A DNA stretch of 64,000 nucleotides, from assembly GCA_010909165.1 (NCBI GenBank), contig MU008173.1, forward strand, positions 1,276,883 to 1,340,882. The letters run 5' to 3'. The translations under genes were made by a program, and so were the position numbers. The notes beneath the pieces were generated by a model, which saw nothing but the letters and a program-made list of their open reading frames with translations, searched no databases and was not told the origin of the DNA. Positions 9,696 through 51,006 of the stretch are shown piece by piece (the stretch's first letter is position 1; each line of letters starts with the position of its first letter). This stretch comes from Anthoceros angustus (Eukaryota > Plantae > Anthocerotophyta).

Positions 9696-10955
9696 TCAAG
9701 GCGCCACCAGCCTCTGCGCCCACTCACCACCGAACGGCACTCGGATCCTTCCTCCCCACTCAACTTCAAACAAAGTCTCAATGGTTCCACCGAACATCCA
9801 CTGCAGCTCCTCCTCGCTGAACAAGCCGTCCTGAGCGGACAAAATGGCCCACGCCTTTCCATAACCACACGCCGGTTCCACGAACGGGAAGTCGGTGCCC
9901 CACATCACCCTCTGCGCTCCGAACACATCCAACAGCTTCCGCAGAAGCGGCCATGTGTCCCGATACGGAAACTCGTCCCTGGAAACCCTAAAGAAGGCGC
10001 TGGCCTTGACGTAGAGCTGCGGAAACCTAGCGAGCCCGAGGAGCCGGCTCCAGGCCTCCTCCTCCGCGACGTCCGAGGGAGGCTTGCAGAAACCTAGATG
10101 ATCCAGCAGCACAGGTGTGGCAGGGAACTGGGAGCACAGCTCCTCGATCTCGTCCACATGCAGCATGAGGCCCTTGAAGCACATGAAGCCGACGGGGATT
10201 CCCAGCTCCCCGGCTTTGGCGAAGAGCGCCTTTCCCACGGCGTCCGTCATCTTGCGGCCGTCCGGCCACAGGTAGGGATTGAACCTGACGGCCCGGAATC
10301 CGTCCTCCTCCACCAGCCGCTGCAGCTCCTCCACTCCGACCAGCCCCGCGTGGATCCGCCAGGCAGCAGCCGACCAGCGTCTGCGGGTACCGCCGCAAGA
10401 TGGCGGACAGGTAGGAGTGGTCGAAGCCGTGGTTGATCGGCTGCACCACCAGCGCCCCGTCCACCCCGCGTCCGCCATGGCCGCCAGCAGCAGGTCCGCT
10501 CCCGCCGGGATGGTCGGCTGCTGGCCCGGCGCGTAGGGGAAGCGCGCCGCCTCCTCCGCGGGGGCCCAGACGTGCACATGCGCGTCGATCTTCCTGGCGT
10601 CCGGCAGAGCCGGCGGCCCCTTCATGGCTCCCTTCCCCCGCCCCCGCCTGAGCAGGAACAGTGTGGCCCCAGCGGACAGCGCCAGCAGCAGCCGCACCGG
10701 CAGCGTGTTCTTGGTCAAGCGCAGCGGCTGTAGCTCCTTCCCGGATGGATTCGCAAATCCCGGCGGCGCTGCCTGCAGCGACTCGGATTCGCCTCCCCCT
10801 CCCTGCTGCAATGCTGCGCTCACCTTCAGCCGCCTACAGCTCGCAACGCTATCCCTCCAGCGCCTCGCCTGGTGCTGTTCTCGGACTGAGAAACACGGCG
10901 GCCCCAACACCGCCTGCCGCCCGATCGTGACGCTCAACCCTAGCGCCATTTTCAT
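9696..10955 (-). CDS. Amidohydrolase_2-family metallohydrolase with transit-peptide-like N-terminus, intronless; two compensating apparent frameshifts
   Basis: IDAHVHVW, GFRAVRFNP, LLDHLG and RVMWGTDFPF motifs. The segment VDGALVVQPINHGFDHSY...CCLADP lies in another frame (~10465-10350), bounded by G-homopolymer runs (-1 and -2 nt), consistent with sequencing error. Confidence 0.88.
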   Translation of the reverse strand: MKMALGLSVTIGRQAVLGPPCFSVREQHQARRWRDSVASCRRLKVSAALQQGGGGESESLQAAPPGFANPSGKELQPLRLTKNTLPVRLLLALSAGATLFLLRRGRGKGAMKGPPALPDARKIDAHVHVWAPAEEAARFPYAPGQQPTIPAGADLLLAAMADAGWTGRWWCSRSTTASTTPTCPPSCGGTRRRWSAAAWRIHAGLVGVEELQRLVEEDGFRAVRFNPYLWPDGRKMTDAVGKALFAKAGELGIPVGFMCFKGLMLHVDEIEELCSQFPATPVLLDHLGFCKPPSDVAEEEAWSRLLGLARFPQLYVKASAFFRVSRDEFPYRDTWPLLRKLLDVFGAQRVMWGTDFPFVEPACGYGKAWAILSAQDGLFSEEELQWMFGGTIETLFEVEWGGRIRVPFGGEWAQRLVAP

Positions 10956-13325: not shown

Positions 13326-15068
13326 ATGCCTGAGGCGGCTGCGGGACTGGACGCCCCGGAGGCGGACGCCGGGGCGGCGGGGGAGTTCGATTTCAGAACT
13401 GCAGCTCGCTTCGCAGGGGAGGGGAACGGGAACGGGAACGGGAGCGGGAACGGGAACGGGAACGGGAACGGGGAGTGGTCGCCCTTGCACCCGCGGGCTC
13501 TGCCGGGGGCCGCCGGGAATGGAGCTCCTGGAGGGGATGCCAGGCTCAAGGCGCTCAAGGAGGCGCAGAAGCAGCAGCAGCAGCAGATGTGGAAGTGGCC
13601 TTTGTATCCTGGCACTCCCGCTAGGAATTTCGCGCAGTCGCAGCCGCAGCCGCAGCCGGCCGTGGCTATGGCGGAGAAGCGGGCCGTCGGGGTGGAGGCG
13701 CCTTCCGGAGGAAATGTGCCGCAGAGGTTCGGTGCTGTGAAATTCAATACTGCCATCGCGGTGAAGCCGCCTCGGTCCAAGTGGGACGACGCGGAGAAGT
13801 GGCTGGTGAACACGGGAGCCGGGGATTCCCCTGCGCATCCGCAACAGCAGCAACAACTGTTACAGCAGCAACAGCCACAGCAACAACATCTGATTCTGCA
13901 GCAACAGCAGCAGCAGATGCAGGTGCAGGTGCAGCTGCAGAGCAAGTACCTTCGGGCAAGAGGAGGAGGCTCGTCCTCGATTGCGGAGAGCTCGGATGGA
14001 GAAACCGGATCCTCTCGCACTGCGGAGTTCGTGTTTCCCACGGCGGGGGCCGGGGCTGTCCCGGCGGCCACCTCCCCACCTCCCAGGCACAAGCAGCTTC
14101 TGCAGCAGCCGCCCCGGCGGAACGCGGGGACGGGGATGTCGGGGAGGTTCTTCTCCGCAGAGGATGTGCCGAAGAGGAGTGCGCGGCCGGCCGCGGAGCA
14201 GGAGGCGGAGGCGGAGGCGGGGGGAAGCGCCCTGTTGGATGCTGCGGAGGACGGGATCGGTAGCTCCATGGGAAGCGAGGCGTTCAAGGACAAATTCGCG
14301 GACTCCGTGGTGGAGCAGCAGCCGCAACCGCAGCCGCAGTCACCGCAGGCGCAGGAAGGTCAGATTGTGGTGTCGCACCGGGACATGGGGACACAAATGA
14401 CTCCCATTCCCAGCCAGCGGGCGTCCAGATGCGCCACGCCGGGCCGGGCCAACTCGCCGTCCCGCCACAACACGCCGTCCCGGAGGTCCGCGTCGCTGGG
14501 ATCCATCTGCCTGGACCTGATCGAGCTGCAGACCTGTCACCTGGCCAAGCTGGAGCTGCGGCAGCTCTCGGAGGGCGTGGAGGGACCGGGGGGCGCCATG
14601 CTCGTAAACGGCCAGGGCGCGGAGCACGGCAGCAGCAACTGGAGCACCAAGGAGGAGGAGGAGGCGGAGAGCAGCAAGCGGCTGCGCCAGATCGACCTGG
14701 CCGAGGTGCGCAAGAGCGTGATCGAGGCCCGCACTGCGGCGTGGCAGGAGGCCGAGCAGGCCAAGTACCTGGCCAGGTTCAAGCGGGAGGAGGTGAAAAT
14801 TCAGGCGTGGGAGAATCACAAACGGGCGCAGGCGGAGGCGGAGATGAAGCGCATCGAGGTGAAGCTGGAGAAGATGCGGTCCCACGCCAACGAGAAGGCC
14901 ATGAACAGGCTCGTGTCCGCCCATCGGAAAGCCGAGGACATGCGCGCCATGGCTCAAGCGAAGCGCAGCGAGGCTGCTGCTAAGACCGTTGCTGGAGCCC
15001 AGCAAATTCGCCAGACGGGCCGCATCCCGCATCGTCCTTCATGCTTCTCGTCCTCCTGCGCCTCCTGA
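13326..15068 (+). CDS. Remorin, group-6 type, intronless
   Basis: PSKWDDAEKWL-like (RSKWDDAEKWL), RDMGTQMTP and TP.R..SP motifs. Remorin_C coiled coil (AAWQEAEQAKYLARFKREEVKIQAWEN...KLEKMRS...RKAE) and a Cys-containing C-terminal anchor. PolyQ and (NG)n tracts. Confidence 0.95.
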   Translation: MPEAAAGLDAPEADAGAAGEFDFRTAARFAGEGNGNGNGSGNGNGNGNGEWSPLHPRALPGAAGNGAPGGDARLKALKEAQKQQQQQMWKWPLYPGTPARNFAQSQPQPQPAVAMAEKRAVGVEAPSGGNVPQRFGAVKFNTAIAVKPPRSKWDDAEKWLVNTGAGDSPAHPQQQQQLLQQQQPQQQHLILQQQQQQMQVQVQLQSKYLRARGGGSSSIAESSDGETGSSRTAEFVFPTAGAGAVPAATSPPPRHKQLLQQPPRRNAGTGMSGRFFSAEDVPKRSARPAAEQEAEAEAGGSALLDAAEDGIGSSMGSEAFKDKFADSVVEQQPQPQPQSPQAQEGQIVVSHRDMGTQMTPIPSQRASRCATPGRANSPSRHNTPSRRSASLGSICLDLIELQTCHLAKLELRQLSEGVEGPGGAMLVNGQGAEHGSSNWSTKEEEEAESSKRLRQIDLAEVRKSVIEARTAAWQEAEQAKYLARFKREEVKIQAWENHKRAQAEAEMKRIEVKLEKMRSHANEKAMNRLVSAHRKAEDMRAMAQAKRSEAAAKTVAGAQQIRQTGRIPHRPSCFSSSCAS

Positions 15069-19887: not shown

Positions 19888-21759
19888 TCACTTGATCGCA
19901 TTGTCGGGTGCCTGTGCCTGTGCCTGTGAGAACTTAAAGCCGATCACTGCAGCAATGTTCTGATTGAGAAGTGCGAACCCCTCCAAGAGCTTCTCCAGCT
20001 TGTCATTCACTCGCTCAAGCACACAAAGCTGAGGCCTGCGGCTTTCCTCCCCAGTGTGCCCCGTCCTCTCCACATGCTCCATGTGCTGCGTCAGCAGGTC
20101 CATCATCAGCTCAGCTCGATACTTCATGGCCTCCTCCCTCTTCTCCGAAGCCTCCAGCTGCGCCTTCATCAACATTTGCATCTCCTTCAGAGAAGAGCTG
20201 ATGCCGCGGGTCTTCTTCTCAACAGGATTCACACAGCCGGGGTCGTTGGCAGAATACAGGATATCCTCTCTCCCAAAATCCGCCGCGAACGCATCACCAC
20301 CGTCCTCCAACCGAGGGTCCCCGCCAAACACGTCTCCCTTGGAATCAAGATTGAGATACTTGTCCTCCAAGGCGTGCGCAACGGGAATCGCCCTGGCGTC
20401 TTGCGATGCCCCAGCCGCATACCCGGACCCGGCAGCAGCCAAGCGGGGAAGCGGAGTGAGGTTCTTCCCCGACACCTCGTACCAAACATCATAAAACTTA
20501 GGCTTGAGAAGCTCCCGCCCGGCAATGCTAGGATTCCAGGACGGCTCTGAGCGTGCAATCTTAGCAGAGAGATACCTGTAGTCCGTGCACTCCCGCCTCA
20601 CGCTCCAGTACTTGCTCTGGCACTGCTTCTTGGAGAAGTGCTTACCGAACCTCTCCTGCATGGCCTTGAGGATGGGAGTCCACTTCTTCTGGTACTTCAC
20701 CTGGCCGTTGCTCTCCTCCCACAGCCGCTGGTGGATGGCGTCGTAGGTCCGGAAGAGGAACTTGACGGACTCGTCCGTCCACGTGATGGCCTGATCCGGG
20801 GACGCGCTCTTCCTCTCGTTCTTCTTCTTCTTCTTCCCATCGCCGCCGGCCCCGGCCTCCCTCGATGTCTCCTTGCTGCTGGATCCGCTGTAGAGCGCGG
20901 AAGGGGAGCAGAGGCCGGGCGCCGCCTCCGCCTCCTCCACGCCCCCGCGTTTGCGCTTCTTTTTCTTCTTCTTGCCGTCCTCGGACTCGTCCACGTCCGA
21001 CTCGTCGTCCCTGGCTCCCACCCGCTTGGCCTTCCTCCGCCCGGGCTCCTTCCCCGCCAGGCCCTTGTCCCCGTGCCGCTGCAGCGGGTCCTCCCTGGGA
21101 GACGTCCTCTTGGCCGAGCGGGCCCGCGCGGGCTCCTCCTCCTCCTCAAACGGGATGTCACTGCGGTTGCTGAATTCCGGACTCCCGGTGGAGTTCTCAC
21201 TGCCCTCGCCGCCTTCCATCTGTCCCTCTCCCTTGAGGAATGCGCGGCCGGCCGCGCCCCCGCCGCCGCTCCTCATGATGCTGTCCACCACCACGCCCTC
21301 GCTCTGCACGAGGTGCTGCCACGCCGAGGACGCCAGGAACTGCTCGGAGAAACCCGGCAGAATCTGCTGCAGCGGCGAGCCCTGCAGCAGCAGCTGGCCG
21401 GCCGCTCCGCTCGCGGAGCCCGGCTGCTGCATCCAGCCCGCGCCGGGCAGGCCTGGGGCCCCGGATCCGATTCCGCACCCGCCGCTCACCGTCCATCCCG
21501 GCCCGTAGAGCTGCGAGAAGAAGGAGGCCCCGGCGGACGGCGAGAAGGGCGCGGGCACGAAGAATGAGGGCAGGAGGCCCGGGCGGAAGCCGGCGTCGTC
21601 CCCCGAGCTGCCGGAGGTCCCGGAATCCTGCTTCTGCAGATGCTGCGCCTGCTCCGCCCACAGGCACTCCTGCTCTTCCAGCTGCACTTGCAGCGGCCCA
21701 TCGCGCAGCGCCTCGTCCGGAGACGGCGAGGACGCGGACTCGGACCTCGCCAGCTTCAT
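19888..21759 (-). CDS. Myb/SANT-like (trihelix-type) DNA-binding protein, intronless
   Basis: WTDESVKFL...KKW..I...M...F...QCQSKYW helix pattern, Lys-rich NLS-like tracts and a C-terminal coiled coil. GC-rich coding composition. First ATG at 21759. Confidence 0.82.
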   Translation of the reverse strand: MKLARSESASSPSPDEALRDGPLQVQLEEQECLWAEQAQHLQKQDSGTSGSSGDDAGFRPGLLPSFFVPAPFSPSAGASFFSQLYGPGWTVSGGCGIGSGAPGLPGAGWMQQPGSASGAAGQLLLQGSPLQQILPGFSEQFLASSAWQHLVQSEGVVVDSIMRSGGGGAAGRAFLKGEGQMEGGEGSENSTGSPEFSNRSDIPFEEEEEPARARSAKRTSPREDPLQRHGDKGLAGKEPGRRKAKRVGARDDESDVDESEDGKKKKKKRKRGGVEEAEAAPGLCSPSALYSGSSSKETSREAGAGGDGKKKKKNERKSASPDQAITWTDESVKFLFRTYDAIHQRLWEESNGQVKYQKKWTPILKAMQERFGKHFSKKQCQSKYWSVRRECTDYRYLSAKIARSEPSWNPSIAGRELLKPKFYDVWYEVSGKNLTPLPRLAAAGSGYAAGASQDARAIPVAHALEDKYLNLDSKGDVFGGDPRLEDGGDAFAADFGREDILYSANDPGCVNPVEKKTRGISSSLKEMQMLMKAQLEASEKREEAMKYRAELMMDLLTQHMEHVERTGHTGEESRRPQLCVLERVNDKLEKLLEGFALLNQNIAAVIGFKFSQAQAQAPDNAIK

Positions 21760-22218
21760 GCTCTCACACATTCCCGTCTACCCGCACGCACCACGCTGCC
21801 AAAACCCCGGAATCCCACCCTGCCACCCCCTCGCCGTTCCGTTCCTGGTCCGCACCCCGTTGCGGATATTCCACGCCTCCGCGCACATGGGCAACCTATC
21901 CCGCATTTTCGCCCTATACTTTTCATGCCTGCCCCATTATCTTATCTACCTATGTACGTACGTATCACTTTTAACCCAGCCACGGAGCCACAGGGCCACA
22001 GGGCCACCACCAAGTTTCTAATTACAGTCCACGTGAGGACTTGAGCTCGTTTAAAAGTCTGATAATCTGGTCAATTGTAAATGCAAGTATTAAAAACTTT
22101 GATCACCTTATCCATTGTAAATACAAGTGCATTTACGTAGGCTGAGAGGAGTGCTGCCATCTCAAGTCAAACATCAATGAACTCAAGATCTCCTACTTAG
22201 TGGAGGTAGAAGCTTTAA

Positions 22219-22970: not shown

Positions 22971-23994
22971 AGTTAGTGCAGCATACATTCTGCTATTATG
23001 ACCACGTACCTTTACTCAAAAGAACGTTTTGATTTGTCCTATTATATTGAATAGAAGCAAAGTGATAACAATTTGCAGCCTACGTTGAACATCCTCAACC
23101 ATGTACAAAAAAATGCTATTACTATTGTGAGGCATGTGAGAGTTCAAACTTTTATTATAAGAAGTGTATTCTACAACACTATGCAAATCACAAACACACG
23201 CAGATATAATAGATAGCGGATGAGTAGGTTGTAAGAGGTTGTTAAAAACTAGGTACGTGTATAAAAGAATCAACGTTAAACATGACAATAGATAAAATTG
23301 TAAAAGTGACTATAAATTTCTTAGAACAGAAAAGACATCAAAATTGAAGACAGAGTTTGGGTTTAACACAATGTTTATGTTGTGGCCATAAAATGTTTGG
23401 CGTGAAATGGTAACATTGTAGCATCAAATGCTATATTAATGTACAGACCCTAAAAGCCCTTTATTGCATTGATTCCATGTGAAATATATTTACCAACTAA
23501 ATATTCCGAAGGCGAAAATTTTGGAGGAAATTACTTGACCTGCAGTGTAATAAAGGTATCAAGAGAAAGTGAAGACATTAATAAACAAGAAGGATCATAT
23601 GTTGATGAACAACTTAGAGGAGTAGTTCTGATGTGTTGGGTGGGAGTGATAGAAATCTATAAAATTGTTATAACATATATCATATTAAGATTTTTTTTCA
23701 AAAAAATTAGAAGTATATATATTGATAATACTTAGATCAGAATAGAATTCGAGATAATGCCAAGCCCAAGTGCTATATATGTACTAGGTATTACTGCACA
23801 TAATGTACATATTGAACGTGAGATTTATTATTTTCCCAAAGAGAAGCCAGGACAGGTAGTCTGACTACCTATTGAAGTCAATTAGGGCTTCGGCCTTCAC
23901 AACCGCGTCCACGGTGAGTGTGGCTGTCGGCACTTCCTAAGTCCTCAGTCCATGAACAGCATTTTACTGAGGTCGGCACGCACCAAACGTGGAC

Positions 23995-24334
23995 ATGTCG
24001 CCGCAGTCTTCTCGTCGAATTGGGAGGAAGGTTGCGGACGTAGCTTACAAGGGTGTGACGGCGGGCCTTGGGGTCTGTACTGTTTTTTTCTTCGGAAATC
24101 TCATGTTCAACGTCGGCCGAGGCCTAGCTTGGCACATGTCTCAAGCTGTATGTGGTGCTCTTCGCTGTGGCTCTTGGATTTGAGTGAGGCTTATGTTTGG
24201 GCTTTGGCGTTCTGCACCTTTTGGATAGCTGTAGGCCACACTGGAAGAAGCTTCTGATTTACTGTTGGCATGTGCAGAGGGAGCAAGAGCAAGAGGCCGC
24301 GGCGCAGCAGAGTTCCCAGCGTGGTTCGCAGTAG
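23995..24334 (+). CDS. COX14: COX14-like small mitochondrial membrane protein (69 aa), 2 exons
   Basis: Exon 1 23995-24147 and exon 2 24278-24334 (GT-AG, phase 0). RKVADVAYKGVTAGLGVCTV...FNVGRGLAWHMSQ matches the recalled COX14 pattern (ADxxYK followed by a single TM helix; plant V.RGL.WH). Confidence 0.75.
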
Positions 24335-24346
24335 GGTTTAGGGTTT
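24332..24346 (+). promoter_or_regulatory. Telo-box (TAGGGTTTAGGGTTT) overlapping the COX14 stop and filling the spacer
   Basis: Two overlapping plant telomeric heptamers (reverse complement AAACCCTAAACCCTA). Telo-boxes are known in 5' regions of plant ribosome-biogenesis and translation genes. Confidence 0.6.
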
Positions 24347-25675
24347 ATGGTATATAGGCCTGCTGAGGGGGAGGCTGACGCTCCAAGGTTGCAGCGGCAG
24401 TTTGCAGCTTCGCTGAGGCCGGAAGACTTTGGGATGGATGATGTAGAAAGTCCAAAACAAGCTGTGAAACGAGAAGGTGAAAAGGGAAAGAAGAAGAAGA
24501 AGAAGGCCGAATGTAGTGAGCAAGGGAAGGAGGTGAAACAAGCGGTTGGCAGTGAGATGGCGGAGGAACGAATTGTGAAAGATGATAGCTTGTCGTGGAA
24601 GGAGGAGGAAATGAAGGTTGTCATGGGTGATGCTCCGGAGTTGCTAGGCCTTCTTGATGAGCTGAAGGGATCTCTTGAGGAGTTGGAGCAGAAGGTAATC
24701 TCTCTTGAAGAGAGAATGCGATCCGGTGGACTTCCTACAAAAGATGGCTTGAGCTATTTGGAGGTGAAGCATCTGCTTCTGTTGAGCTACAGTCAGGCCA
24801 TTGTGTTCTATCTGCTGCTCAAGGCTGAAGGTCGGTCTGTAAGGGATCACCCTGTGATTCCACGTCTTGTCGAGTTGCGTTTGTTCATGGAGAAGATGCG
24901 TCCTCTGGACAAGAAGCTTGAGTACCAAGTCGAGAAGCTCCTTAAGTCTACTGAGCTGAGCAATGGTTCCGAGGGTGTGAAGGATAAGGATGCGTTGAAG
25001 TACAGACCTAATCCCAGTTTACTCGTGCCTAAAGTTGACACAGACACTAAAGAAGCCGGAGGTGTGTATCGTCCGCCTATGCTAGCTCCAACTGCCATGA
25101 AGGAAGACATGAGGCCCGCTGACAAAAGGTCTAGGGATCGGGCAGAAAAGGAAGTCCGCCGTAGGGCAGCACGCAGTTCATTTGTGAAGGAGCTTGCGGA
25201 CGACTTGGAGGGTAGACCTGAAGAATTGAGGTTCCCTCAGTTCTTCATCGGGGCTGAAAGTAAGGAACTGAATAGAGAGCGGGAGAAACTGGAGGCTCGT
25301 GCTAGGCAAGAGGAAGATTTGTTTGCTAGAGTTCCTCTCTCTAAAGCCGAAAGGACGAAGCTGAAGCACATGAAGAGATCAAGGAGTGGCCTGATGGGCA
25401 TGTTTGATGACTTTGATGATGGAGTCGCGGATCTGGTGGAGATGGAGGACGGAAAGGCAAGGAAGGGTGTGGGCGGGCCGCCTGATGACTTGTTGCGGTC
25501 TCGAAAGAGTTCACAATTTATTGCTGAATCAGGTCGTGCTTCTAAGAAGCAAAGGGTGGCTTCTCATGCTGCTGTCCTACCGGTTAAGGATGATACTGGG
25601 GAGAGACGGAACACGCATGACATCCAGAAGGCTTCTAGGAAGCAGGTACCGAGGAGAAAGGGCAGACGATCCTGA
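24347..25675 (+). CDS. Sas10/Utp3/C1D-family SSU processome protein (neuroguidin/Lcp5-like core), intronless
   Basis: YLEVKHLLLLSY...HPV..RLVELRLFMEKMRPLDKKLEYQVEKL (Sas10_Utp3 domain) plus NGDN-type LKYRPNP, GVYRPP, GRPEE and EEDLFARV motifs. Confidence 0.88.
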   Translation: MVYRPAEGEADAPRLQRQFAASLRPEDFGMDDVESPKQAVKREGEKGKKKKKKAECSEQGKEVKQAVGSEMAEERIVKDDSLSWKEEEMKVVMGDAPELLGLLDELKGSLEELEQKVISLEERMRSGGLPTKDGLSYLEVKHLLLLSYSQAIVFYLLLKAEGRSVRDHPVIPRLVELRLFMEKMRPLDKKLEYQVEKLLKSTELSNGSEGVKDKDALKYRPNPSLLVPKVDTDTKEAGGVYRPPMLAPTAMKEDMRPADKRSRDRAEKEVRRRAARSSFVKELADDLEGRPEELRFPQFFIGAESKELNREREKLEARARQEEDLFARVPLSKAERTKLKHMKRSRSGLMGMFDDFDDGVADLVEMEDGKARKGVGGPPDDLLRSRKSSQFIAESGRASKKQRVASHAAVLPVKDDTGERRNTHDIQKASRKQVPRRKGRRS

Positions 25676-27319
25676 GGACTTGATAAGGCCTGATGAGGAC
25701 AATTTCTACCTACAGGCCAAAGACCTGCAGGCGTTCAAGAAGGCTGCAAAGTCTGCCAAGTACCTCCAGGGAGCAAACATTGACTTCGGCCGAGGAAGAT
25801 GTCGAAGGTGAAAGAAAAAATCAAGGCAGATGGAGAAGAAAATTAAGTCTATCAGTTTTATGCTACCGTTTGATTAATGTGCTGCAAGCAAACGTCGTCC
25901 ATTGTTAGAAACGTCTTGTCAAATATATGAACCTGCTTCATTGATTATTTTTCAATTAAAAAAGTTCCCTAAAACCCTTTTGCAAGTTCTTTCCTTTGAC
26001 ACCGCTCATGCTCCTATCGGCGCTCATGCTCATCCAGTATGCCGCAAGAACCACGGTTAGAAATGCTTTAACTGATTCTTTCGCTTCCTGGCTTGATTCT
26101 TTGGGTGAAATGAAATTAATTTGCTTTGAGCCCAAAAAACATTAGGCCAAGTTTCTCGGTGACCCTTGAGTTTCCGCCCAAAAGATAATATTTTACTGTA
26201 GACTTTTTAATTTTTATTTAGGCTAGAAACTAACTCAAAGTCAGTTCCATGATCCTTATGTAGTTAAGAATTATCTTATAACTTGTTAAGGCAAAACCCT
26301 TAAACTTTCAATACCAGGACTTCCCTTAGCTTTTCAACCTTCTAGCTTCAACCTAGAAAAAAAATGTTTCCCATCTAATAAACATCCTTACGACTCAATG
26401 TCACAATCACAAACTAAATAGAGGAAGACACAACTGAAGAGTCCTACGAAGAGTTTGAGGGAACGTATGAAAATTCAAAGATTTTTAAGCAAATGCACAC
26501 AACTTTAGAGTTTTTCACATGTTTTGATTTGTTTTTGGGAAAGTGATGGAGGGTTAACTTTATTGGATTACATATATAATATATAAAGATATTACAAATA
26601 GCTCATCTCATGCCTTGCATCGTTCTTGCAGTGCTCTCGATTAAGCTGTCGACTTCTCATGTAGAGCATTATGAAATACTAGTAGTAGTTGTTGGCACAC
26701 GCAAGTTCTTTTCATAGCTGTTCTGCTACGTGTAGTGTGAATTGAACCTTAACACTGCAAACGGTGGCCGTGTGGCAGATTTGTCTGTGCATTCTATGAT
26801 CCCTGCCACTCCAATAAAATTCCAGGATGGCCTCTTCGAAATTTCCTTGCCCTGGCTGTCCAACCGTGGCAACCGACGGACCTGCAAGTGCTGACCTGGG
26901 CGCTGTACTCGACCCTGTCAAGCGAGTTCCATGGGTGCATGTCAATTGATCTTTTTGGCAGTATCCTCAGTCTGAGGGAATCTTACCGCTCTCAGGCTAG
27001 CTTCATCAGATGCTGATCTCAACTCTACGCTTGCTCCTGAGATACCTGAGAATTGACAAGACCTGGAGTGTATTATGTTTGCTCTTGTGCAAAGGCCTCT
27101 GCAAGCGACACGTACAAGCGCCATGCTGCAGGAGACGTCTCCAAAGAACACAGCTCAGAAGGGAAGAACGGAACACCACTGGCGAACTACCGACACCACT
27201 GCGTCTTCATGGCAGGACAATCTCAGTTCGTAGTAGTCTAGAATCTTTCACGGTGTCTTCATAGTGAACTCTACGGCGAACAACTGGACCATGCATATGC
27301 TTCTGGCATGCTCCGACAA

Positions 27320-33715: not shown

Positions 33716-36700
33716 TCAATCTGCCTCTCGTCGTGCCAGGAAGTCGTACCCAACACTGCAGTGATTTGCATGCTTTGAACAACTGCACTGTCCTCCAAAC
33801 TGTGGGTGTATCATGTGCATTTCGAAGTGTTTCTGCAGAAATGCCATCGTTAATAAAATTGGTCTGTTTGACGGCACAACCGAACCCCCTTGATGCCTGT
33901 TTGACAGCACAACAGAAACACACTAATCATTACTATGTTTGCAGCTGATTCACTACCTGAAGAGTCTGTAAAAACCGTCTTCCGATTACAGAGATCGACT
34001 CTTTACTCTCTGCAAGCCCGCAGAGAAATGAGAGTCTTAGTCCAGTAATCAGCGGGATGACTATGAAAATTATAAAACATAATGTTAAGGGCTAGTCGAC
34101 TTACCCAGAAAGCCCTTTTCAATCATCGCTCCCTTGTTGTAAGAAGGCCGCAAGATCACCCCCCTAATAGCTGATACAACTAGTGACAGCATGACGGGAG
34201 CATTCAGCACGTAGACTGAACCTCCGCGGCCTGCAGAGGGAGAAAATACAGAGCCTTCAGATCGGAACGAGAGATAAAATTATATATCGATGCTCATCAT
34301 CACCACCAATCTCCTAACACATGGTAGACAACGACTTATATGGGTACACTCTAAAGAGGGCAAACCACCTGCATAGTCTCGGTTGAGAAGTGTTCCAAGC
34401 CGCTGGAGAATGTCCATGGGCGGCATTCGGAGCAAACCAAGTCCTGACAGATCTATGACCAGATTCATCTGTTCAACTGATCCATTGAATAGGTTGAGCT
34501 CTGCCAATTCCATGTTGGATACTGCAACAAAGCCAGTTTCAGCATCATGCATATGTAGTATTCATTATGGTAAGCAGCATAGCTGACAACGGCATGATAC
34601 AACATCAACATCAAATCAGAAGCATCAATGACAGGTGTGGTGTGAACCAGCTCTTCTTACCAATTACAGTCACAAGTGAGCCTAGCAATGTGGAAGATAA
34701 AGTACACACAGCCTTTCCCAAAAGAACACATAGTGTCGGTCTGCCTTTTTTGCAATGCCCGTGCCAGAAGACTAGATCGCGCCACGGAGCAGCTGCAAGA
34801 TCAGATACGCTCCAGTAATTCTGGTCTCCATGAGTATGACGCCTCTGTAGAATGGACCTTGACAATGTTCAGGCTTGCGAAACGTTAGGAAATTGCACAC
34901 CACTGTTTGGAAGCAACTTACACTTCTTATGGCCACACACAAGGGATGACTGCTGTGCGAATAGGCCACATTCCCTTCTCCAACTCGCTCATGCAAGATG
35001 ACATCATCGATTTGTGCTGTTCCTACACCCTCCTGTGATATGCACCCTGGCACATCACAGTTCTGAACAGACAGCGATTGCACAGCGATAGGCCCACCAG
35101 CAATGGGCAGGCCTTGATCATCCAGTACTTGGACCGTCTGTTCACTCCCAACTGTGCTTGTCCACACTTCCTCTTTACTCTGCCCTGGTGGCGCTGAACC
35201 TGGGACTGCTGGGGCTTGTTGGGGTGGTACTGTGGTTGAAAGATTGAGAAGCTCATCCTCACTGCAAGATGATGAGCGAAATTGTTAACAATCTGCAAGC
35301 TTGCATCATCAACGTGCATAATGACAGTTCCACCTCATCACCTCAACCCGTCTGTGAAGAGGAACTATACAAACACCGCTTAATAGTGGACATGCCGAAA
35401 ATCTCTAACCGGCCTCATTTTCATGTCACACTGGGATTTACCTGTCTGTAAAACCGAATGATGAGCTGGAGCTGGAGCTAGTCAGAGACTCAGTGTCTGG
35501 TCCAGGTTGGTGAGGATGGTAAGGTTCAGAACTAGTATGATCTGCCCACCTATTGTCCGCAGTTCCATCTGAGTTTGAGTTCAGGACATCAACTTTATCC
35601 ATGCTTGACACAGGCAGGGGTGCACAGGTGGCTCCCCTTCCAGATAGACCATACTCTCTCTTCAGGTGTTGTGCCCCAGTAGTTTTGGTTTTGATATCCA
35701 ATGAGTCAGACAAGAACTGCGAGTTTACCACCAGGAGATCGGCATCATCTGCTAATCTGACCTTGTCATGCTCCAACATGAATTCTGGATTGCCTGTAAC
35801 AAACGTTGATGGGCCATGATCCAAACTGTCAAAAGGTTTCCCAGGGTCTTGAGTATTTCCGGAGGACTTAAGACTCTCCAATGCGTCATGGCTGCCAACA
35901 TCACCTCCATCCTCATCATAGAGTACTACAGTACTTGCAGAGTCTCTGAGCCTGTCATCTGACCAGAAACCTGACTCCGGAGGTTGCATAGTTGCAGCAA
36001 TTTCAGTACAACTGTAAGTCTGCCCACTGGAGGATTTAGTATCCACCATGCCAACATCGGTGTAGTCCACCTCTGATCGACTCATCGTTTCTACTGCCTC
36101 AGACTTGATGCCCTGCATCACTGAAAGACGCTCAACTGGGAATGGATGACCCATAAGAGCGACGACGCCTGCACTGGGGATAGCACAAACAGATGGATTT
36201 GACTGTAAGGAGCATGGTCCACCCTCTTTTCGAACACTCACCGAGTGGTCTGCTATCTTGTCCATAGGCGAAAAGTTGTGGAAAGAGTTTTCTTCCATTT
36301 CCCCGAACTTTGACAGCTCTTGTCCTACAAGTCGACCCTTAAACAAGTCCTCTTCATGGTGCTCTATGAGAGCACAATCAACGCACGTGAGTGCATCGAA
36401 AAACACCTCAGTAGTAGGACTTTCAACTGAATCATCTATTCTAAGGGGGGAGTTCTCTACAGAGATGTCACCACAACCTACTTTCTGGACAGCCAGCCTG
36501 AGAGTCTTGGTAGCAGGAGGTAAAATACATGCTGGCTGTTCAATGGCTGCTAGCTGGACAGTATCCCCCGTCTGAGACTCTTCGAAAACCTGCGGATACA
36601 GCCCTTGCTCCACGCTCATCCGAGAGTCAGCTTGCTGACGGCCTTCCTGATCGGTGTGGGACCGATCAGAGCCAAGAGAAAGCAACGCCGAATCTCTCTC

Positions 36701-37774
36701 TTCAGGATTCAGAATGTATTCGGCTTCAATTGCTGAACTTTCTGGCGTGCGTTCGAGCGGATATCTGTGATCATTCGCACATGCTTTGGAAAGAGCTCCC
36801 ACATCCTGGAAAGGCGCCTCAAGTGCCTGCCATTCTGCTGCTTCTTTGCTCTTGAGTGCTGCACTGCACAGCTGCCTGAGTCCACCTTTTGACCCCCTCT
36901 GACTCTCAAGTAGCATCCTACAATCGTGATTTACTCTCAAGTCTCTCAAGGACAATAAGGCATGAGCTGTCAGAAAAGGGCCTAAGAGCGGACAGCAAAA
37001 CCGAGTGGAGACAGCCACACCAATCTTCAGAGCCACGTGTGACCACAGTCGCCACTTGGGAATCGTACTACGCGTATGCCTGTGAGGATGTACAGGCATC
37101 ATAGAGACCAAAAGCAGTTCAAACACCGGCCAATAGGCACTGGGCCGCACAAGTCTCAACCCCGCAGCCCCCACATATGTCAAAAAAAGACACCTACGGC
37201 AATCCATATCCAACACCTGCTGCTCCTCCATTTCACCAGGAATATACACACTTCTGGCATGACATCCTCTCGTAATACACGACAATGCATGCTCATCACC
37301 ACAACCAGTGTCACCATCTACATCAGCATCAACCAATTGACGATCCATCGCAACTCTGCCACCAATTCTGCCATCTTTGAAATCCAACTCCAAAGCGAAA
37401 CAATCCCTGCAGTGACCTCCTGCCACAGCAGGCGGACGAGACTGCTCTCCTCTGACAAGTTTCTGCATCAACTCCATAATATTTTCCATTTGCGAGCTTC
37501 GCACATCCTCCCTTCTCCTCCCGATGCAATGCAGCCTGTGCTGTCGTTTCCTGCTTCCACCGTTTCCACTCAGCATTCCACTGAGCTGCAACTGCGACCC
37601 CTGCTGCTGGACAACAGAATCGGCCGTCTCTGCACTAATCCCTTCCTGCTGCCCCCGACTCCGCCAAGGAAGGCTGAAAAGCCGCAGATTCTGAGAACGC
37701 TTACTGCGATCTGCTCGTTTCCTCCGTCCTCCCAGCTCCTCCACATCCATTGAGACCGAGCTCCCTTCCCTCAT
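33716..37774 (-). CDS. CRAL-TRIO (Sec14-like) domain protein with very long low-complexity N-terminal region, multi-exon
   Basis: C-terminal exons encode WRDLVFWHGHCKKGRPTLCVLLG, VSNMELAELNL...MNLVIDLSGLGLLRMP and VYVLNAP; last exon 33832-33716 encodes PQFGGQCSC. Upstream 778-aa ORF begins after an acceptor at 37783 and splices out at 35442. One exon junction near 34830-34920 needs an indel to reconcile phase. Confidence 0.7.
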
Positions 37775-38717
37775 TGGATCAACCTGGTATCAAACGAGCC
37801 AGATCGACCATCAGCGCAGCTTCAATTCCGCCTGCATAATTTGCTCCAGTACAGAGACGGGAAAAATGCGCAACGCCGGCGCTCTTCTTCTCTTCTTCTT
37901 TTGCGGCTTCATGCTCTAATACTCCTGGACTCGACAGATCACTCAGCAAAGATCGTTTCCGGAACACTCCGATTCTTGCTTCCAGCGCTCGTGTGACGAC
38001 GATCTCCCGACCCGGCGCCCCCCGAGCCCGAGCTGGTGCCGGCGCCCGCGCCCGCCGCCCGCGCCGGCAAAGCTCGCAGCAGCTCGCAGCCTTGGAACAG
38101 GAAATGTCCAGGCCATAGCTGCCCATGTTGACGTACAGACATAGAGATGCTGGCAGATTCGCCGCTTATTCCTCCCCGATACGCGCTACTGTAAGCCTAG
38201 CATTACAAACGGCATGTCCTGGCATTATTCGTTGCTAAACCCTAAACCCTTGAAAGTGCACTGCACCCGGTCGGCGACGGCCTTAATAGCACTAAAGGCG
38301 AGCTGCTCAAAACGAGCATGGTTCATGGGCAGCTGCTAAATGGAAGGGACGATATTCCGGAGCAGAAGGGCGCATATGCGTCTTGTGAGGTCCGGGCTGC
38401 TGGCAGCTGCCCAACTGGTATACACCACGTCTTCTCTCTCACCAAACCTCTGTAAACAAGCCTGTCATAACACGCCTCCAGCTTACAAGCCTGGCATGTC
38501 ACGGCTCCACCTTCTCATGGCCACATGGCAGAGACAGACTCTACACGAAAGTGAACAATTTATTATAGCTTTCGGTCTCACACCAGACAACAGACAGGGG
38601 CAAGTACATACCTTCTAGATCCTATCGGCCAAGAGTGGCTCGCACCACAGCACGGAAATAAGTTTGTAGTGGGAGTCTGGGATATGGTATAGGGAACGAA
38701 TCGTCTCAAGCGCGGGC

Positions 38718-49692: not shown

Positions 49693-50588
49693 ATGGCTGG
49701 CACAACACCTAATCAAGGAACAGATGGCATGACCGAATTGAGTAATGCCGCTGGTCTTCTCTTTGCGGCGCGTTGTCATCCTTTACTACTCTGCATCACT
49801 CTTTGGCTGCAATACGGGTTCGCCACGGCCTGGCTCGGGGCTGCCATTATTCCTCTGGACCCTCGGCAGGGTTCGAATTCTACAACCAACTGCCGCCCCT
49901 ATGGGCTGGATTTGGGGCTCCACTGCCAGCAGGAGTTGGAGCCGCCAATCCGCTGGAGTCGGAGCTGGTCTATGGAATCCACTGCCTGGTGTTGGAGCAA
50001 GACTTGGAGCACAACCTCTACATGTTGGTCTTGGGAATCCACATCATGGCGTTGGAGGAGGACCCGGGCAACCTCTGCTTGCCCTCCCTGCCTATCAGCC
50101 CACATCCACTTCAGAATTTAAAGAACGCGACAGATTCAATGGACAAAAGTACCCCATGTGGAGTGTCCGCATGAGGACTGCCCTTGAAGCTCGCCATGTA
50201 TGGGACGTAGTTTGTGGGAGCACTCCTCGACCTGCAGCAAATGCCAATCAGTACGATAAGGACAAGTGGGCTAATGCTAACAACGTAGCACGCGCCTTAA
50301 TAATCAGCGGCTTGGACGATGTGCTTGTACCCGACATTGCTTACCTCACCAGTGCCGAGGAGATGTGGAAGCAGCTGTGTGATACTTACGACGTCCGAAA
50401 CATGGTCACCATGTGTTCTGTGCGCAGTGAGCTGTTTTCTCTTCGCATGCGTGAAGGAGATAAAGGAGCTACCTTTGTCGGCAAGTTTAGACAGCTCCGG
50501 TCACAATTCATTTCTCTTGGTTGCACCGTGCCTGAACTTGATGCTGTAGCACAGCTGTTGACAAGTCTTCCACCCAGCTATCAACCCT
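49693..50588 (+). mobile_element. Copia-1 gag (UBN2-type), cut at 50588
   Basis: RFNGQKYPMWSVRMRTALEARHVWDVV...A..LI...L....SAEEMWKQL...ELFSLRMREG...LLTSLPPSY, then an abrupt switch to repeat DNA. Confidence 0.9.
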
Positions 50589-51006
50589 CACCACAAGAAT
50601 CGCAGGTGCTTTTACAACGCATTTTACAACGTAGTTTACAACCTCACGTTGTAAAAACGGGCATTACGTTGTAAACCGGTGGCGAAACTAGGTTGTAAAA
50701 TTGTTGACGTGGCAGGCAAGATTGCCACATCATCAAGTTCTGGCGTGGTTTACAACCTCATTTACAACGCATTTACAAGCGTGGTTTCTGGCGTGGTTTA
50801 CAACGTCATTTACAATGTTGGGCTCGTTTACAACCTAAATGACAACGCCATTTACAACGTGGTTGCCTTGTAATCTAGGTTGTAAAGTAGGTTGTTAATA
50901 GGAGGTTGTAGTCTGACAACTTAACTAGGTTGTAAAGTGGGTCTATTTACAACGTATTTTACAATATACGTTACAACCTCATTTACAACCTTCATACACC
51001 CTCACT

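What the first reader, a model, noticed from the sequence alone, without database searches (positions are those of the whole stretch)
23995..25675. Candidate dicistronic or read-through unit: COX14 sits 12 nt upstream of, and in frame with, a Sas10/NGDN ORF, with a telo-box as spacer
Seen: the spliced COX14-like CDS ends at TAG 24332-24334. It is followed by GGT TTA GGG TTT and then the ATG (24347) of a 442-aa ORF in the same frame. The spacer plus the stop forms two plant telomeric repeats, leaving no room for a terminator and promoter. Known: plants and green algae have rare dicistronic mRNAs and conserved-peptide uORFs, and telo-boxes mark ribosome-biogenesis genes. Inference: one mRNA may couple complex IV assembly to cytosolic 18S biogenesis through re-initiation, leaky scanning or UAG read-through (giving a membrane-anchored fusion). 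Alternatively the telo-box belongs to a promoter nested within COX14.
Basis: partly seen in the sequence, partly recalled or inferred. Interest (0 to 1): 0.78.

Follow-up and report, generated by a model that had tools for sequence, protein, structure and literature searches.

The report
COX14-like plus neuroguidin two-gene messenger
In a land plant (probably a hornwort), a tiny mitochondrial-type membrane protein gene and a shortened ribosome-assembly gene lie 12 bases apart on what looks like one spliced RNA. This is a new gene pair for a kind of two-protein messenger already known from green algae and one land-plant locus.

Summary

**The two ORFs**
- ORF1 (23995-24147 + 24278-24334) belongs to a streptophyte-wide family of small one-helix proteins and keeps the family's intron position. 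It resembles COX14 only below Pfam's threshold.
- ORF2 (24347-25675) is an intronless Lcp5/neuroguidin gene. It lacks the N-terminal acidic region and the Sas10 C-terminal domain of its ~700-aa orthologues. Remnants of that domain lie out of frame after the stop.

**RNA evidence**
- Contigs of the same organism cover only 23912-25936.
- One error-free contig joins exon 1, the splice, the stop, the telo-box and ORF2.
- A ~12%-diverged paralogue and a related species (organism C) show the same junction, there apparently with a full-length ORF2.
- Marchantia, Diphasiastrum and Spirogloea do not link the two genes.

**Best reading (0.6):** a lineage-specific bicistronic mRNA. It was probably born when an Lcp5 cDNA, with the telo-box of its 5' UTR, landed behind the small gene. 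ORF2 is probably translated by leaky scanning.

**Rivals:** a start site nested in exon 2; ORF2 as an untranslated passenger; UAG read-through, which is unlikely.

Contigs cannot show transcript ends. The scan has noted other bicistron candidates in this genome, but not this pair.

The parts
23912..23994 (+). 5' untranslated leader. The 5' ends of RNA contigs of three species fall at 23912-23919.
   Evidence: table 8 (X1 record 1, X2 record 9, X6 record 21)
23952..23954 (+). Upstream AUG in another frame. It opens 65 codons, and its stop TAG is created by the splice junction. Relatives read ACG here, so it is not conserved.
   Evidence: 23953 T>C in X2, X6
23995..24147 (+). ORF1 exon 1: 51 codons encoding a single hydrophobic helix. 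It holds the conserved core of a streptophyte small-protein family that resembles COX14.
24148..24277 (+). Intron of ORF1 (GT..AG), removed in the RNA. It sits at the family's conserved intron position.
   Evidence: joint 24147->24278, no intron depth; homologue models run into an intron after WHxxQ
24278..24334 (+). ORF1 exon 2: an 18-codon hydrophilic tail plus TAG.
24332..24346 (-). Double telo-box (two plant telomere units) that spans the ORF1 stop and the whole 12-nt spacer.
24347..25675 (+). ORF2: 442 codons, intronless. It is an Lcp5/neuroguidin-type protein lacking the N-terminal acidic region and the Sas10 C-terminal domain of its long orthologues.
24653..24895 (+). Sas10_Utp3 domain (residues 103-183 of ORF2).
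   Evidence: PF04000, 73.6 bits against a cut-off of 30
25656..25840 (+). Decayed remnant of the Sas10 C-terminal region, readable only by changing frame about three times. Homology ends near 25840, where relatives continue with NRGLTPHRKK.
   Evidence: loose ends at 25840; +G after 25813 in relatives
25676..25936 (+). 3' untranslated region. The RNA contig ends at 25936, and no RNA follows until 26781.
   Evidence: X1 record 7; depth table

Best explanation
This is a lineage-specific bicistronic nuclear transcription unit in a land plant, probably a hornwort. One promoter upstream of about 23912 drives a spliced, roughly 1.9-kb RNA (23912-25936).

**ORF1.** The RNA first encodes a 69-residue single-helix protein. 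It belongs to a conserved streptophyte family that resembles the cytochrome oxidase assembly factor COX14.

**ORF2.** Twelve bases later the RNA encodes a 442-residue Lcp5/neuroguidin-type small-subunit processome protein.

**Shown**
- Both ORFs are real, conserved genes.
- ORF1's intron is spliced.
- RNA contigs are continuous across the junction.
- The junction is shared by a paralogue and a related species.
- ORF2 has stayed open while the sequence after it decayed.

**Inferred: origin.** An intronless Lcp5 cDNA, carrying the telo-box of its own 5' UTR, landed at the end of the small gene and came to depend on that gene's promoter. The window holds a later duplicate. That duplicate lost the N-terminal acidic region by an in-frame deletion of about 169 codons, and lost the C-terminal domain by frameshifts. 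What remains is a protein with the architecture of the short neuroguidins of mosses, ferns, seed plants and animals.

**Inferred: translation.** Ribosomes reach the ORF2 AUG mainly by leaky scanning past the ORF1 AUG. ORF1's AUG has G at -3 but U at +4, the only other AUGs inside ORF1 are in frame and in weak context, and none is out of frame. Termination-reinitiation over the 12-nt gap is the second possibility.
For: **RNA**
- X1 contigs are identical to the window and cover only 23912-24147 and 24278-25936.
- X1 record 2 (636 nt, 0 mismatches) holds 42 nt of exon 1, the 24147->24278 splice, the stop, the spacer, and ORF2 up to 24871.
- The depth bins add up exactly with no intron cover.
- X1 record 3 is a ~12%-diverged paralogue. 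It carries 24106-24135, 24280-24362 and ORF2 pieces on one contig, with about 509 extra bases.
- X6 record 23 joins 24299-24355 to 24491. About 507 extra bases (169 codons) lie between, which matches the missing N-terminal region.

**ORF1 is a real gene**
- 44 relatives with E<=1e-3 among 1.84 billion proteins, 45-64% identical. They include Diphasiastrum, Spirogloea, Papaver and Beta.
- Of the 7 differences from relatives that one search lists inside exon 1, 5 are synonymous.
- 8 of 17 family members give sub-threshold COX14 Pfam hits.
- The three best ESM Atlas clusters are all COX14.

**ORF2 is a real gene**
- PF04000 E 2e-20; neuroguidin 7mq8 E 4e-29.
- 62-65% identity to the hornwort Nothoceros protein.
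- 0 frame breaks in 1287 nt, followed by 3 in the next 170 nt.

**Origin**
- Marchantia's orthologue has at least 5 introns in the homologous part, and two telo-boxes about 200 nt before its ATG.
- Telo-boxes sit mainly in 5' UTRs (PMC3022908).

**AUG inventory:**
Against: - All RNA evidence is from assembled contigs, which cannot show transcript starts, ends or single molecules. The tool itself warns that a contig across two genes shows no single transcript.
- The exon 1 contig has about half the depth of the ORF2 body (52.7 against 100-121 in X1). This fits 5'-end fall-off, but it also fits some transcripts starting in exon 2.
- Two in-frame AUGs inside ORF1 would hinder leaky scanning, and the lack of out-of-frame AUGs is not significant (P about 0.10-0.14).
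- No poly(A) tract or target-site duplication supports retroposition, and this genome has many other long intronless ORFs.
- The sizes of the extra segments in relatives are inferred from contig arithmetic, not read from sequence.
- No translation data exist for either ORF.
Confidence: 0.6

Rival explanations
1. Two overlapping transcription units. The telo-box marks the 5' UTR of an ORF2 mRNA whose start site lies inside exon 2 of the small gene (24278-24331). ORF2 is translated from that monocistronic RNA. Spanning RNAs are a by-product, or serve only ORF1.
For: - Telo-boxes lie mostly in 5' UTRs, just downstream of start sites (PMC3022908).
- Marchantia's Lcp5 has telo-boxes before its ATG.
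- Depth of the exon 1 contig is about half that of the ORF2 body in X1 and X2.
Against: - No contig covers the intron, so a nested start would have to fall in a 54-nt stretch.
- In X6 exon 1 is deeper than ORF2.
- The halved depth is what a 224-nt 5'-terminal contig would show anyway.
- The junction has been kept in a paralogue and a related species.
Confidence: 0.22
2. ORF2 is a dying passenger. The RNA is in effect a COX14-like mRNA with a long 3' UTR made of a truncated Lcp5 copy that is no longer translated. The full-length paralogue does the work.
For: - ORF2 lacks both terminal regions of its orthologues, and its C-terminal domain is broken by three frame changes.
- The window copy alone has Ser where the paralogue, the relatives and all orthologues have Cys in the SYCQ motif (24791).
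- Another agent reported a similar 'dead second gene' in this genome (unchecked).
Against: - 442 codons stay open over about 12% divergence, while the 170 nt behind them collected 3 frameshifts. If indels fell uniformly, the chance is about 0.0016.
- The conserved motifs are kept.
- The remaining architecture equals the natural short neuroguidins of mosses, ferns and seed plants.
Confidence: 0.1
3. UAG read-through gives a membrane-anchored ORF1-ORF2 fusion protein.
For: The two ORFs are in frame, 15 nt from stop to AUG, and the stop is followed by G.
Against: - In the paralogue ORF1 appears to stop at a TAA at the exon junction. The distance to the AUG (about 68 nt) is not a multiple of three (tables 5 and 5c).
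- No stable structure follows the stop (z +1.06).
- The context is not the stop-CAR-YYA type known from plant viruses (own knowledge).
Confidence: 0.03

Closest known systems
CDC26-TTM3 bicistronic transcript of land plants and green algae (described in PMC11291117, citing Lorenzo-Orts et al.)
   Same: A small first ORF (65 against 69 residues) and a larger, unrelated second ORF lie on one nuclear mRNA. An NMD-prone layout is expected because the first stop is far from the 3' end.
   Different: CDC26-TTM3 is deeply conserved from algae to angiosperms and has been tested experimentally. This pair is confined to one lineage, is absent from Marchantia, Diphasiastrum and Spirogloea, and is known only from contigs.
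Green-algal bicistronic loci (PMC7896298; leaky-scanning study PMC11291117)
   Same: ORF1 is short and ORF2 long. The inter-ORF gap is very short (algal medians 40-183 nt, some with overlapping stop and start). Small mitochondrial assembly-type proteins occur as ORF1, for example LYR proteins.
   Different: This is a land plant. ORF1 here keeps two in-frame internal AUGs, whereas in the algal reporter a single restored AUG abolished ORF2 expression. The spacer is a telo-box, a DNA element with no counterpart in the algal loci.
Neuroguidin / Lcp5 (SSU processome; human 7mq8 chain NC; Marchantia 'LCP5' P0004)
   Same: The Sas10_Utp3 domain and the conserved middle region are present. It is 47-65% identical to plant orthologues.
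   Different: Long plant and algal orthologues (643-720 aa) have an acidic N-terminal region and a Sas10 C-terminal domain. The window copy has lost both and has no introns.
COX14 (PF14880; yeast Cox14, human C12orf62)
   Same: The size matches, there is one transmembrane helix, and there is a short hydrophilic tail. Pfam and language-model similarity are weak but consistent.
   Different: The score is below Pfam's cut-off. No plant COX14 is recognised in the 2018 review (PMC5877523). Location and function are untested.
Retrogenes that borrow a host gene's promoter (general class; own knowledge)
   Same: An intronless copy of an intron-bearing gene sits directly behind an intron-bearing host gene and is transcribed with it.
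   Different: There is no poly(A) remnant or target-site duplication. The host's coding sequence is not fused to the copy but kept as a separate cistron.

Membership tests
COX14 (PF14880) | Matches the Pfam model at or above the gathering score | tested here: not met
   17.9 bits against a cut-off of 25, E 0.0027. 8 of 17 family members give similar sub-threshold hits, the best at 5e-4.
COX14 (PF14880) | Small (about 60-70 aa) protein with one transmembrane helix and a short polar tail | tested here: met
   69 residues. The hydrophobic stretch is about residues 20-38. The tail is rich in Gln, Glu, Ala and Ser.
COX14 (PF14880) | Inner-mitochondrial-membrane location and binding of newly made COX1 | not testable with these tools
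   No experimental data. ESM Atlas neighbours are COX14 clusters at 0.86-0.87, which is a lead only.
Sas10/Utp3/C1D, neuroguidin-Lcp5 branch | Sas10_Utp3 domain above the Pfam threshold | tested here: met
   PF04000, 73.6 bits against a cut-off of 30, residues 103-183.
Sas10/Utp3/C1D, neuroguidin-Lcp5 branch | Closer to neuroguidin/Lcp5 than to Sas10/THALLO | tested here: met
   PDB: neuroguidin E 4e-29 against Sas10 E 3e-17. 47-50% identity to plant neuroguidins against 32-36% to Sas10/THALLO-type proteins.
Sas10/Utp3/C1D, neuroguidin-Lcp5 branch | Sas10 C-terminal domain (PF09368), as in the long orthologues of liverworts, a lycophyte, a hornwort and algae | tested here: not met
   It is absent from the ORF. 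Remnants appear in three frames at 25656-25840, and homology then ends.
Bicistronic nuclear mRNA (green-alga / CDC26-TTM3 type) | Two conserved protein-coding ORFs, colinear, with a short gap and no room for a terminator plus promoter | tested here: met
   The gap is 12 nt. Both ORFs have significant homologues.
Bicistronic nuclear mRNA (green-alga / CDC26-TTM3 type) | Single mature RNA molecules span both ORFs | tested here: inconclusive
   A spliced contig spans both with 0 mismatches, and there is one transcribed island. Contigs do not prove single molecules.
Bicistronic nuclear mRNA (green-alga / CDC26-TTM3 type) | No separate start site for ORF2, or only a minor one | not testable with these tools
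   Only contigs were available. No raw reads, CAGE or long reads.
Bicistronic nuclear mRNA (green-alga / CDC26-TTM3 type) | Both ORFs translated | not testable with these tools
   No Ribo-seq or proteomics. The only indirect evidence is that both frames are kept open.
Bicistronic nuclear mRNA (green-alga / CDC26-TTM3 type) | ORF1 start in weak context and ORF1 free of further AUGs (the leaky-scanning signature) | tested here: inconclusive
   The ORF1 AUG has G at -3 and U at +4. There are two in-frame internal AUGs in weak context and none out of frame. The depletion is not significant.
Retrogene | Intronless where orthologues have introns | tested here: met
   Marchantia has at least 5 introns in the part homologous to ORF2 residues 95-406. 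The window has none.
Retrogene | Poly(A) remnant and target-site duplication | tested here: not met
   None was seen. The 3' end of the copy is lost beyond 25840.
Programmed stop-codon read-through | In-frame relation conserved, and a read-through-promoting context or structure present | tested here: not met
   The paralogue is out of frame. There is no structure.

The most novel reading that the evidence does not exclude
Hornworts, unlike other land plants studied so far, may keep an alga-like set of many bicistronic mRNAs whose first cistron is a very small protein. This locus would then show how a new one is born. An intronless cDNA of a ribosome-biogenesis gene, with the telo-box of its leader, lands just behind the stop of a small mitochondrial-protein gene. 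It is then expressed only through that gene's promoter, and is kept that way through speciation and duplication. The telo-box would act at the DNA level on the whole unit.
Probability: 0.3. Interest if true: 0.68.

Novelty: new member of a known kind. Interest (0 to 1): 0.55.

Why it matters
Two-protein nuclear messengers are well documented in green algae. In land plants I found only one locus of this kind discussed in the papers I read, CDC26-TTM3 (PMC11291117); 271 polycistronic read-through loci have also been reported in Arabidopsis (PMC9768141, not read).

A second, lineage-specific pair, in a genome where the scan has flagged several more, would suggest that hornworts use this layout regularly.

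It would also give a datable example of how such a unit arises, apparently by gene movement rather than by functional coupling.

It points to a likely plant COX14, which the 2018 review of plant cytochrome oxidase assembly lists as missing.

It also catches the long-to-short transition of neuroguidin in the act: one copy long, one copy freshly shortened.

For genome annotation it matters because gene callers will miss the 69-codon ORF or mis-join the two.

Tried and rejected
**Searches that found nothing useful**
- Word-index search with exon 1: no candidates. The exhaustive search was then needed.
- Exact look-ups of ORF2 and of a 777-aa neighbouring ORF: not on record, so the source genome could not be named.
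- Logan and JGI contigs of more distant homologues (L002, L003, L004) have no second ORF and say nothing about hornworts.
- The Diphasiastrum Lcp5 look-up failed. Locus tags still place the two genes on different chromosomes.
- The metagenome scan gave one unrelated genomic fragment with introns (L006).
- Rfam found nothing in the window.
- A profile of the small-protein family found no solved structure.
- Papers: nothing on a COX14 dicistron, and none of the 12 top-ranked papers in a search for Anthoceros with bicistronic/polycistronic/dicistronic mentions Anthoceros.

**Readings rejected**
- Read-through fusion.
- ORF1 as a merely regulatory uORF: it is a conserved stand-alone gene in other plants.
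- Deep conservation of the pair.

- The joined (spliced) ORF1 model was not sent to any search tool. Exon 1 was searched by reference, and exon 2 (18 residues) is below the tools' minimum.
- A codon walk across the splice was done by coordinates inside a script, and no joined sequence was kept.
- The sequences of the paralogue and of the relatives' contigs could not be fetched. Statements about them rest on the tables.
Full report
**Observation.** The sequence is exactly as described.
- An ATG at 23995 opens 51 codons, up to a GT donor at 24148.
- After a 130-nt GT..AG intron, exon 2 (24278-24334) adds 18 codons and a TAG.
- Twelve bases follow (GGTTTAGGGTTT), and then an ATG at 24347 opens a 442-codon ORF in the same frame, ending at TGA 25673-25675.
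- The stop and the spacer together are two plant telomere units.
- Matches to this 15-mer at up to two mismatches number three in the 64-kb window, against 0.06 expected: the site itself, one overlapping it, and one at 38237.
- The single 8-mer occurs five times against 1.5 expected.

**ORF1.** Pfam matches exon 1 to COX14 only below threshold: 17.9 bits against a cut-off of 25.
- The word-index search found nothing.
- The exhaustive search of 1.84 billion representatives found 44 relatives with E<=1e-3. Nearly all are proteins of 53-130 residues, 45-64% identical over residues 11-50.
- Named members come from Diphasiastrum, Spirogloea, Papaver, Beta, Genlisea, Adiantum and Eleusine.
- The alignment has nine invariant positions around one hydrophobic helix.
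- Many database models run on into nonsense right after the WHxxQ motif. That is what an unrecognised intron would give, and it is the place of the window's intron, so the intron position is ancestral.
- Eight of 17 members give the same sub-threshold COX14 hit, and the three nearest ESM Atlas clusters are COX14 families.
- A 2018 review lists no plant COX14 (PMC5877523).
- I therefore call ORF1 'COX14-like'. It is certainly a real, conserved small membrane protein, and probably the plant COX14, but membership is not shown.
- Of the seven differences from related species that one search lists inside exon 1, five are synonymous third-position changes. This fits selection on this frame.

**ORF2.** It carries a Sas10_Utp3 domain (E 2e-20), and its best solved relative is human neuroguidin of the small-subunit processome (E 4e-29).
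- Its closest homologues are 643-720-residue proteins that also carry the Sas10 C-terminal domain. They come from the hornwort Nothoceros aenigmaticus (62-65% identity), from liverworts, from Diphasiastrum, from zygnematophytes and from chlorophytes.
- Against these, the window protein lacks about 100-190 N-terminal acidic residues. Homology starts at residue 5.
- It also lacks the C-terminal domain.
- That domain is still visible after the stop, but only by changing frame near 25650, 25765 and 25815. Homology ends near 25840, where related species read on with NRGLTPHRKK.
- Three frame breaks in 170 nt after none in 1287 nt would happen with a chance of about 0.0016 if indels fell evenly. The 442 codons have therefore been kept open by selection.
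- What remains has the extent of the natural short neuroguidins of mosses, ferns, seed plants and humans.
- ORF2 has no intron, whereas the Marchantia orthologue has at least five in the homologous part.

**RNA.** The one reads call laid Logan contigs of four runs.
- They behave as RNA. They cover only 23912-24147, 24278-25936 and a separate exon at 26781-26893, and nothing between.
- In X1, whose contigs are identical to the window, one 636-nt contig holds the last 42 nt of exon 1, the 24147->24278 splice, exon 2, the stop, the telo-box, the ATG, and ORF2 up to 24871, all without a mismatch.
- The depth bins are reproduced exactly by the listed contigs with no intron cover.
- Contigs of three species begin at 23912-23919, and the last X1 contig ends at 25936.

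**A second copy and the relatives.**
- A second X1 contig (1143 nt, about 12% diverged) starts at 24106, carries 24280-24362 and then ORF2 pieces. By position arithmetic it has about 509 extra bases between 24362 and 24735.
- In organism C, an 810-nt contig joins 24299-24355 to 24491 with about 507 extra bases (169 codons).
- In organism B, the sequence just before 24365 reads QSSDDDALAE, the acidic region the window lacks.
- I infer that the paralogue and organism C carry a full-length Lcp5 starting at the same ATG behind the same junction. Organism B shows a full-length N-terminus, but no contig across the junction. The window copy has an in-frame N-terminal deletion.
- At 24791, 24841, 24943, 26820 and 26851 the window differs from the paralogue and from all relatives together. 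The neighbouring exon is expressed in X1 only in the diverged form. The window therefore seems to be the faster-changing copy of a duplicated segment.

**Distribution.** The pair is not old.
- Marchantia's Lcp5 has a divergently oriented RNase P gene upstream and no COX14-like ORF.
- In Diphasiastrum the two genes carry locus tags of chromosomes 15 and 13, and the small gene stands alone within 6 kb.
- In Spirogloea they are on different scaffolds.
- A metatranscriptome contig of a homologue is monocistronic.

**Origin (inferred).** Four facts bear on it:
- ORF1 keeps its ancestral intron.
- ORF2 has none.
- Marchantia's Lcp5 has two telo-boxes about 200 nt before its ATG.
- Telo-boxes sit mainly in 5' UTRs (PMC3022908).

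The simplest story is that an Lcp5 cDNA, with the telo-box of its leader, was inserted at the very end of the small gene. The telo-box may even supply the present stop codon. No poly(A) remnant or target-site duplication survives. This window also has several other long intronless ORFs, so general intron loss is an alternative.

**Translation (inferred).** In the mature RNA the AUGs before ORF2 are these:
- 23952, in another frame. Its stop is formed by the splice, and relatives read ACG here.
- The ORF1 AUG (G at -3, U at +4).
- Two in-frame AUGs in weak context.

None is out of frame, but that is not significant (P about 0.10-0.14). In green algae, leaky scanning was shown to serve such ORF2s, and an added AUG in ORF1 abolished ORF2 expression (PMC11291117). 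The two internal AUGs are therefore a difficulty here. The 12-nt gap would also suit termination-reinitiation, but 69 codons is long for that. Read-through is unlikely, for two reasons:
- The paralogue's ORF1 appears to end at a TAA at the exon junction, about 68 nt and out of frame from the ATG.
- No structure follows the stop.

A start site nested in exon 2 cannot be excluded with contigs. The exon 1 contig has half the depth of the ORF2 body in two runs, but not in the third.

**Comparison and novelty.**
- The layout works like the green-algal bicistrons and like CDC26-TTM3 (PMC7896298; PMC11291117). The gene pair, the telo-box spacer and the apparent birth by gene movement are new.
- I found no paper on a COX14 dicistron, and none of the top-ranked papers in the Anthoceros search deals with hornwort bicistrons.
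- Other notes of this scan, unchecked, report further bicistron candidates in the same genome and also guess that it is a hornwort. My only test of that guess is that the best ORF2 homologue is from Nothoceros.

**Limits.**
- The only RNA evidence is assembled contigs from one call.
- The sequences of the paralogue and the relatives could not be fetched.
- The joined ORF1 model was not searched. Exon 1 was searched by reference, and exon 2 is too short for the tools.

Noticed in passing
window 26781-26893: This is an exon of a neighbouring spliced gene. In the same-organism run it is represented only by a contig with 7 mismatches, which agrees with the three related species at 26820 and 26851. 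The window's copy may therefore be a silent duplicate, and the whole segment a duplicated block.
   Followed up: partly
window 23952-24147 (+24278-24279): An upstream AUG opens 65 codons in another frame and stops at a TAG created by the splice junction. The next AUG downstream is that of ORF2, 68 nt on. Relatives have ACG instead of this AUG.
   Followed up: partly
window 38237-38251: A second double telo-box (one mismatch) lies about 460 nt upstream of a 778-codon ORF on the minus strand (35438-37774). That ORF has no Pfam match.
   Followed up: no
window 19888-21771 (-): A 627-codon ORF lies in an island of about 70% G+C and has no Pfam match.
   Followed up: no
window 9696-10955 (-), 13326-15068 (+): These are long intronless ORFs for an amidohydrolase (PF04909) and a remorin (PF03763). 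With ORF2 and others, they suggest many intronless genes in this genome. The remorin points to a land plant.
   Followed up: partly
window 49745-50674 (+): A copia-type gag ORF (PF14223), a retrotransposon fragment.
   Followed up: no
L001 3790 and 3816 (Marchantia polymorpha): Two telo-boxes lie about 185-210 nt before the ATG of the Marchantia Lcp5 orthologue, in the 700-nt gap it shares with a divergently oriented RNase P p30 gene.
   Followed up: yes
proteins P0093-P0135: The streptophyte small-protein family found with ORF1 is mostly unnamed or mis-modelled in public annotation, with read-through into the intron and fusions such as P0115 and P0101. It may be the plant COX14 that reviews list as missing.
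   Followed up: partly
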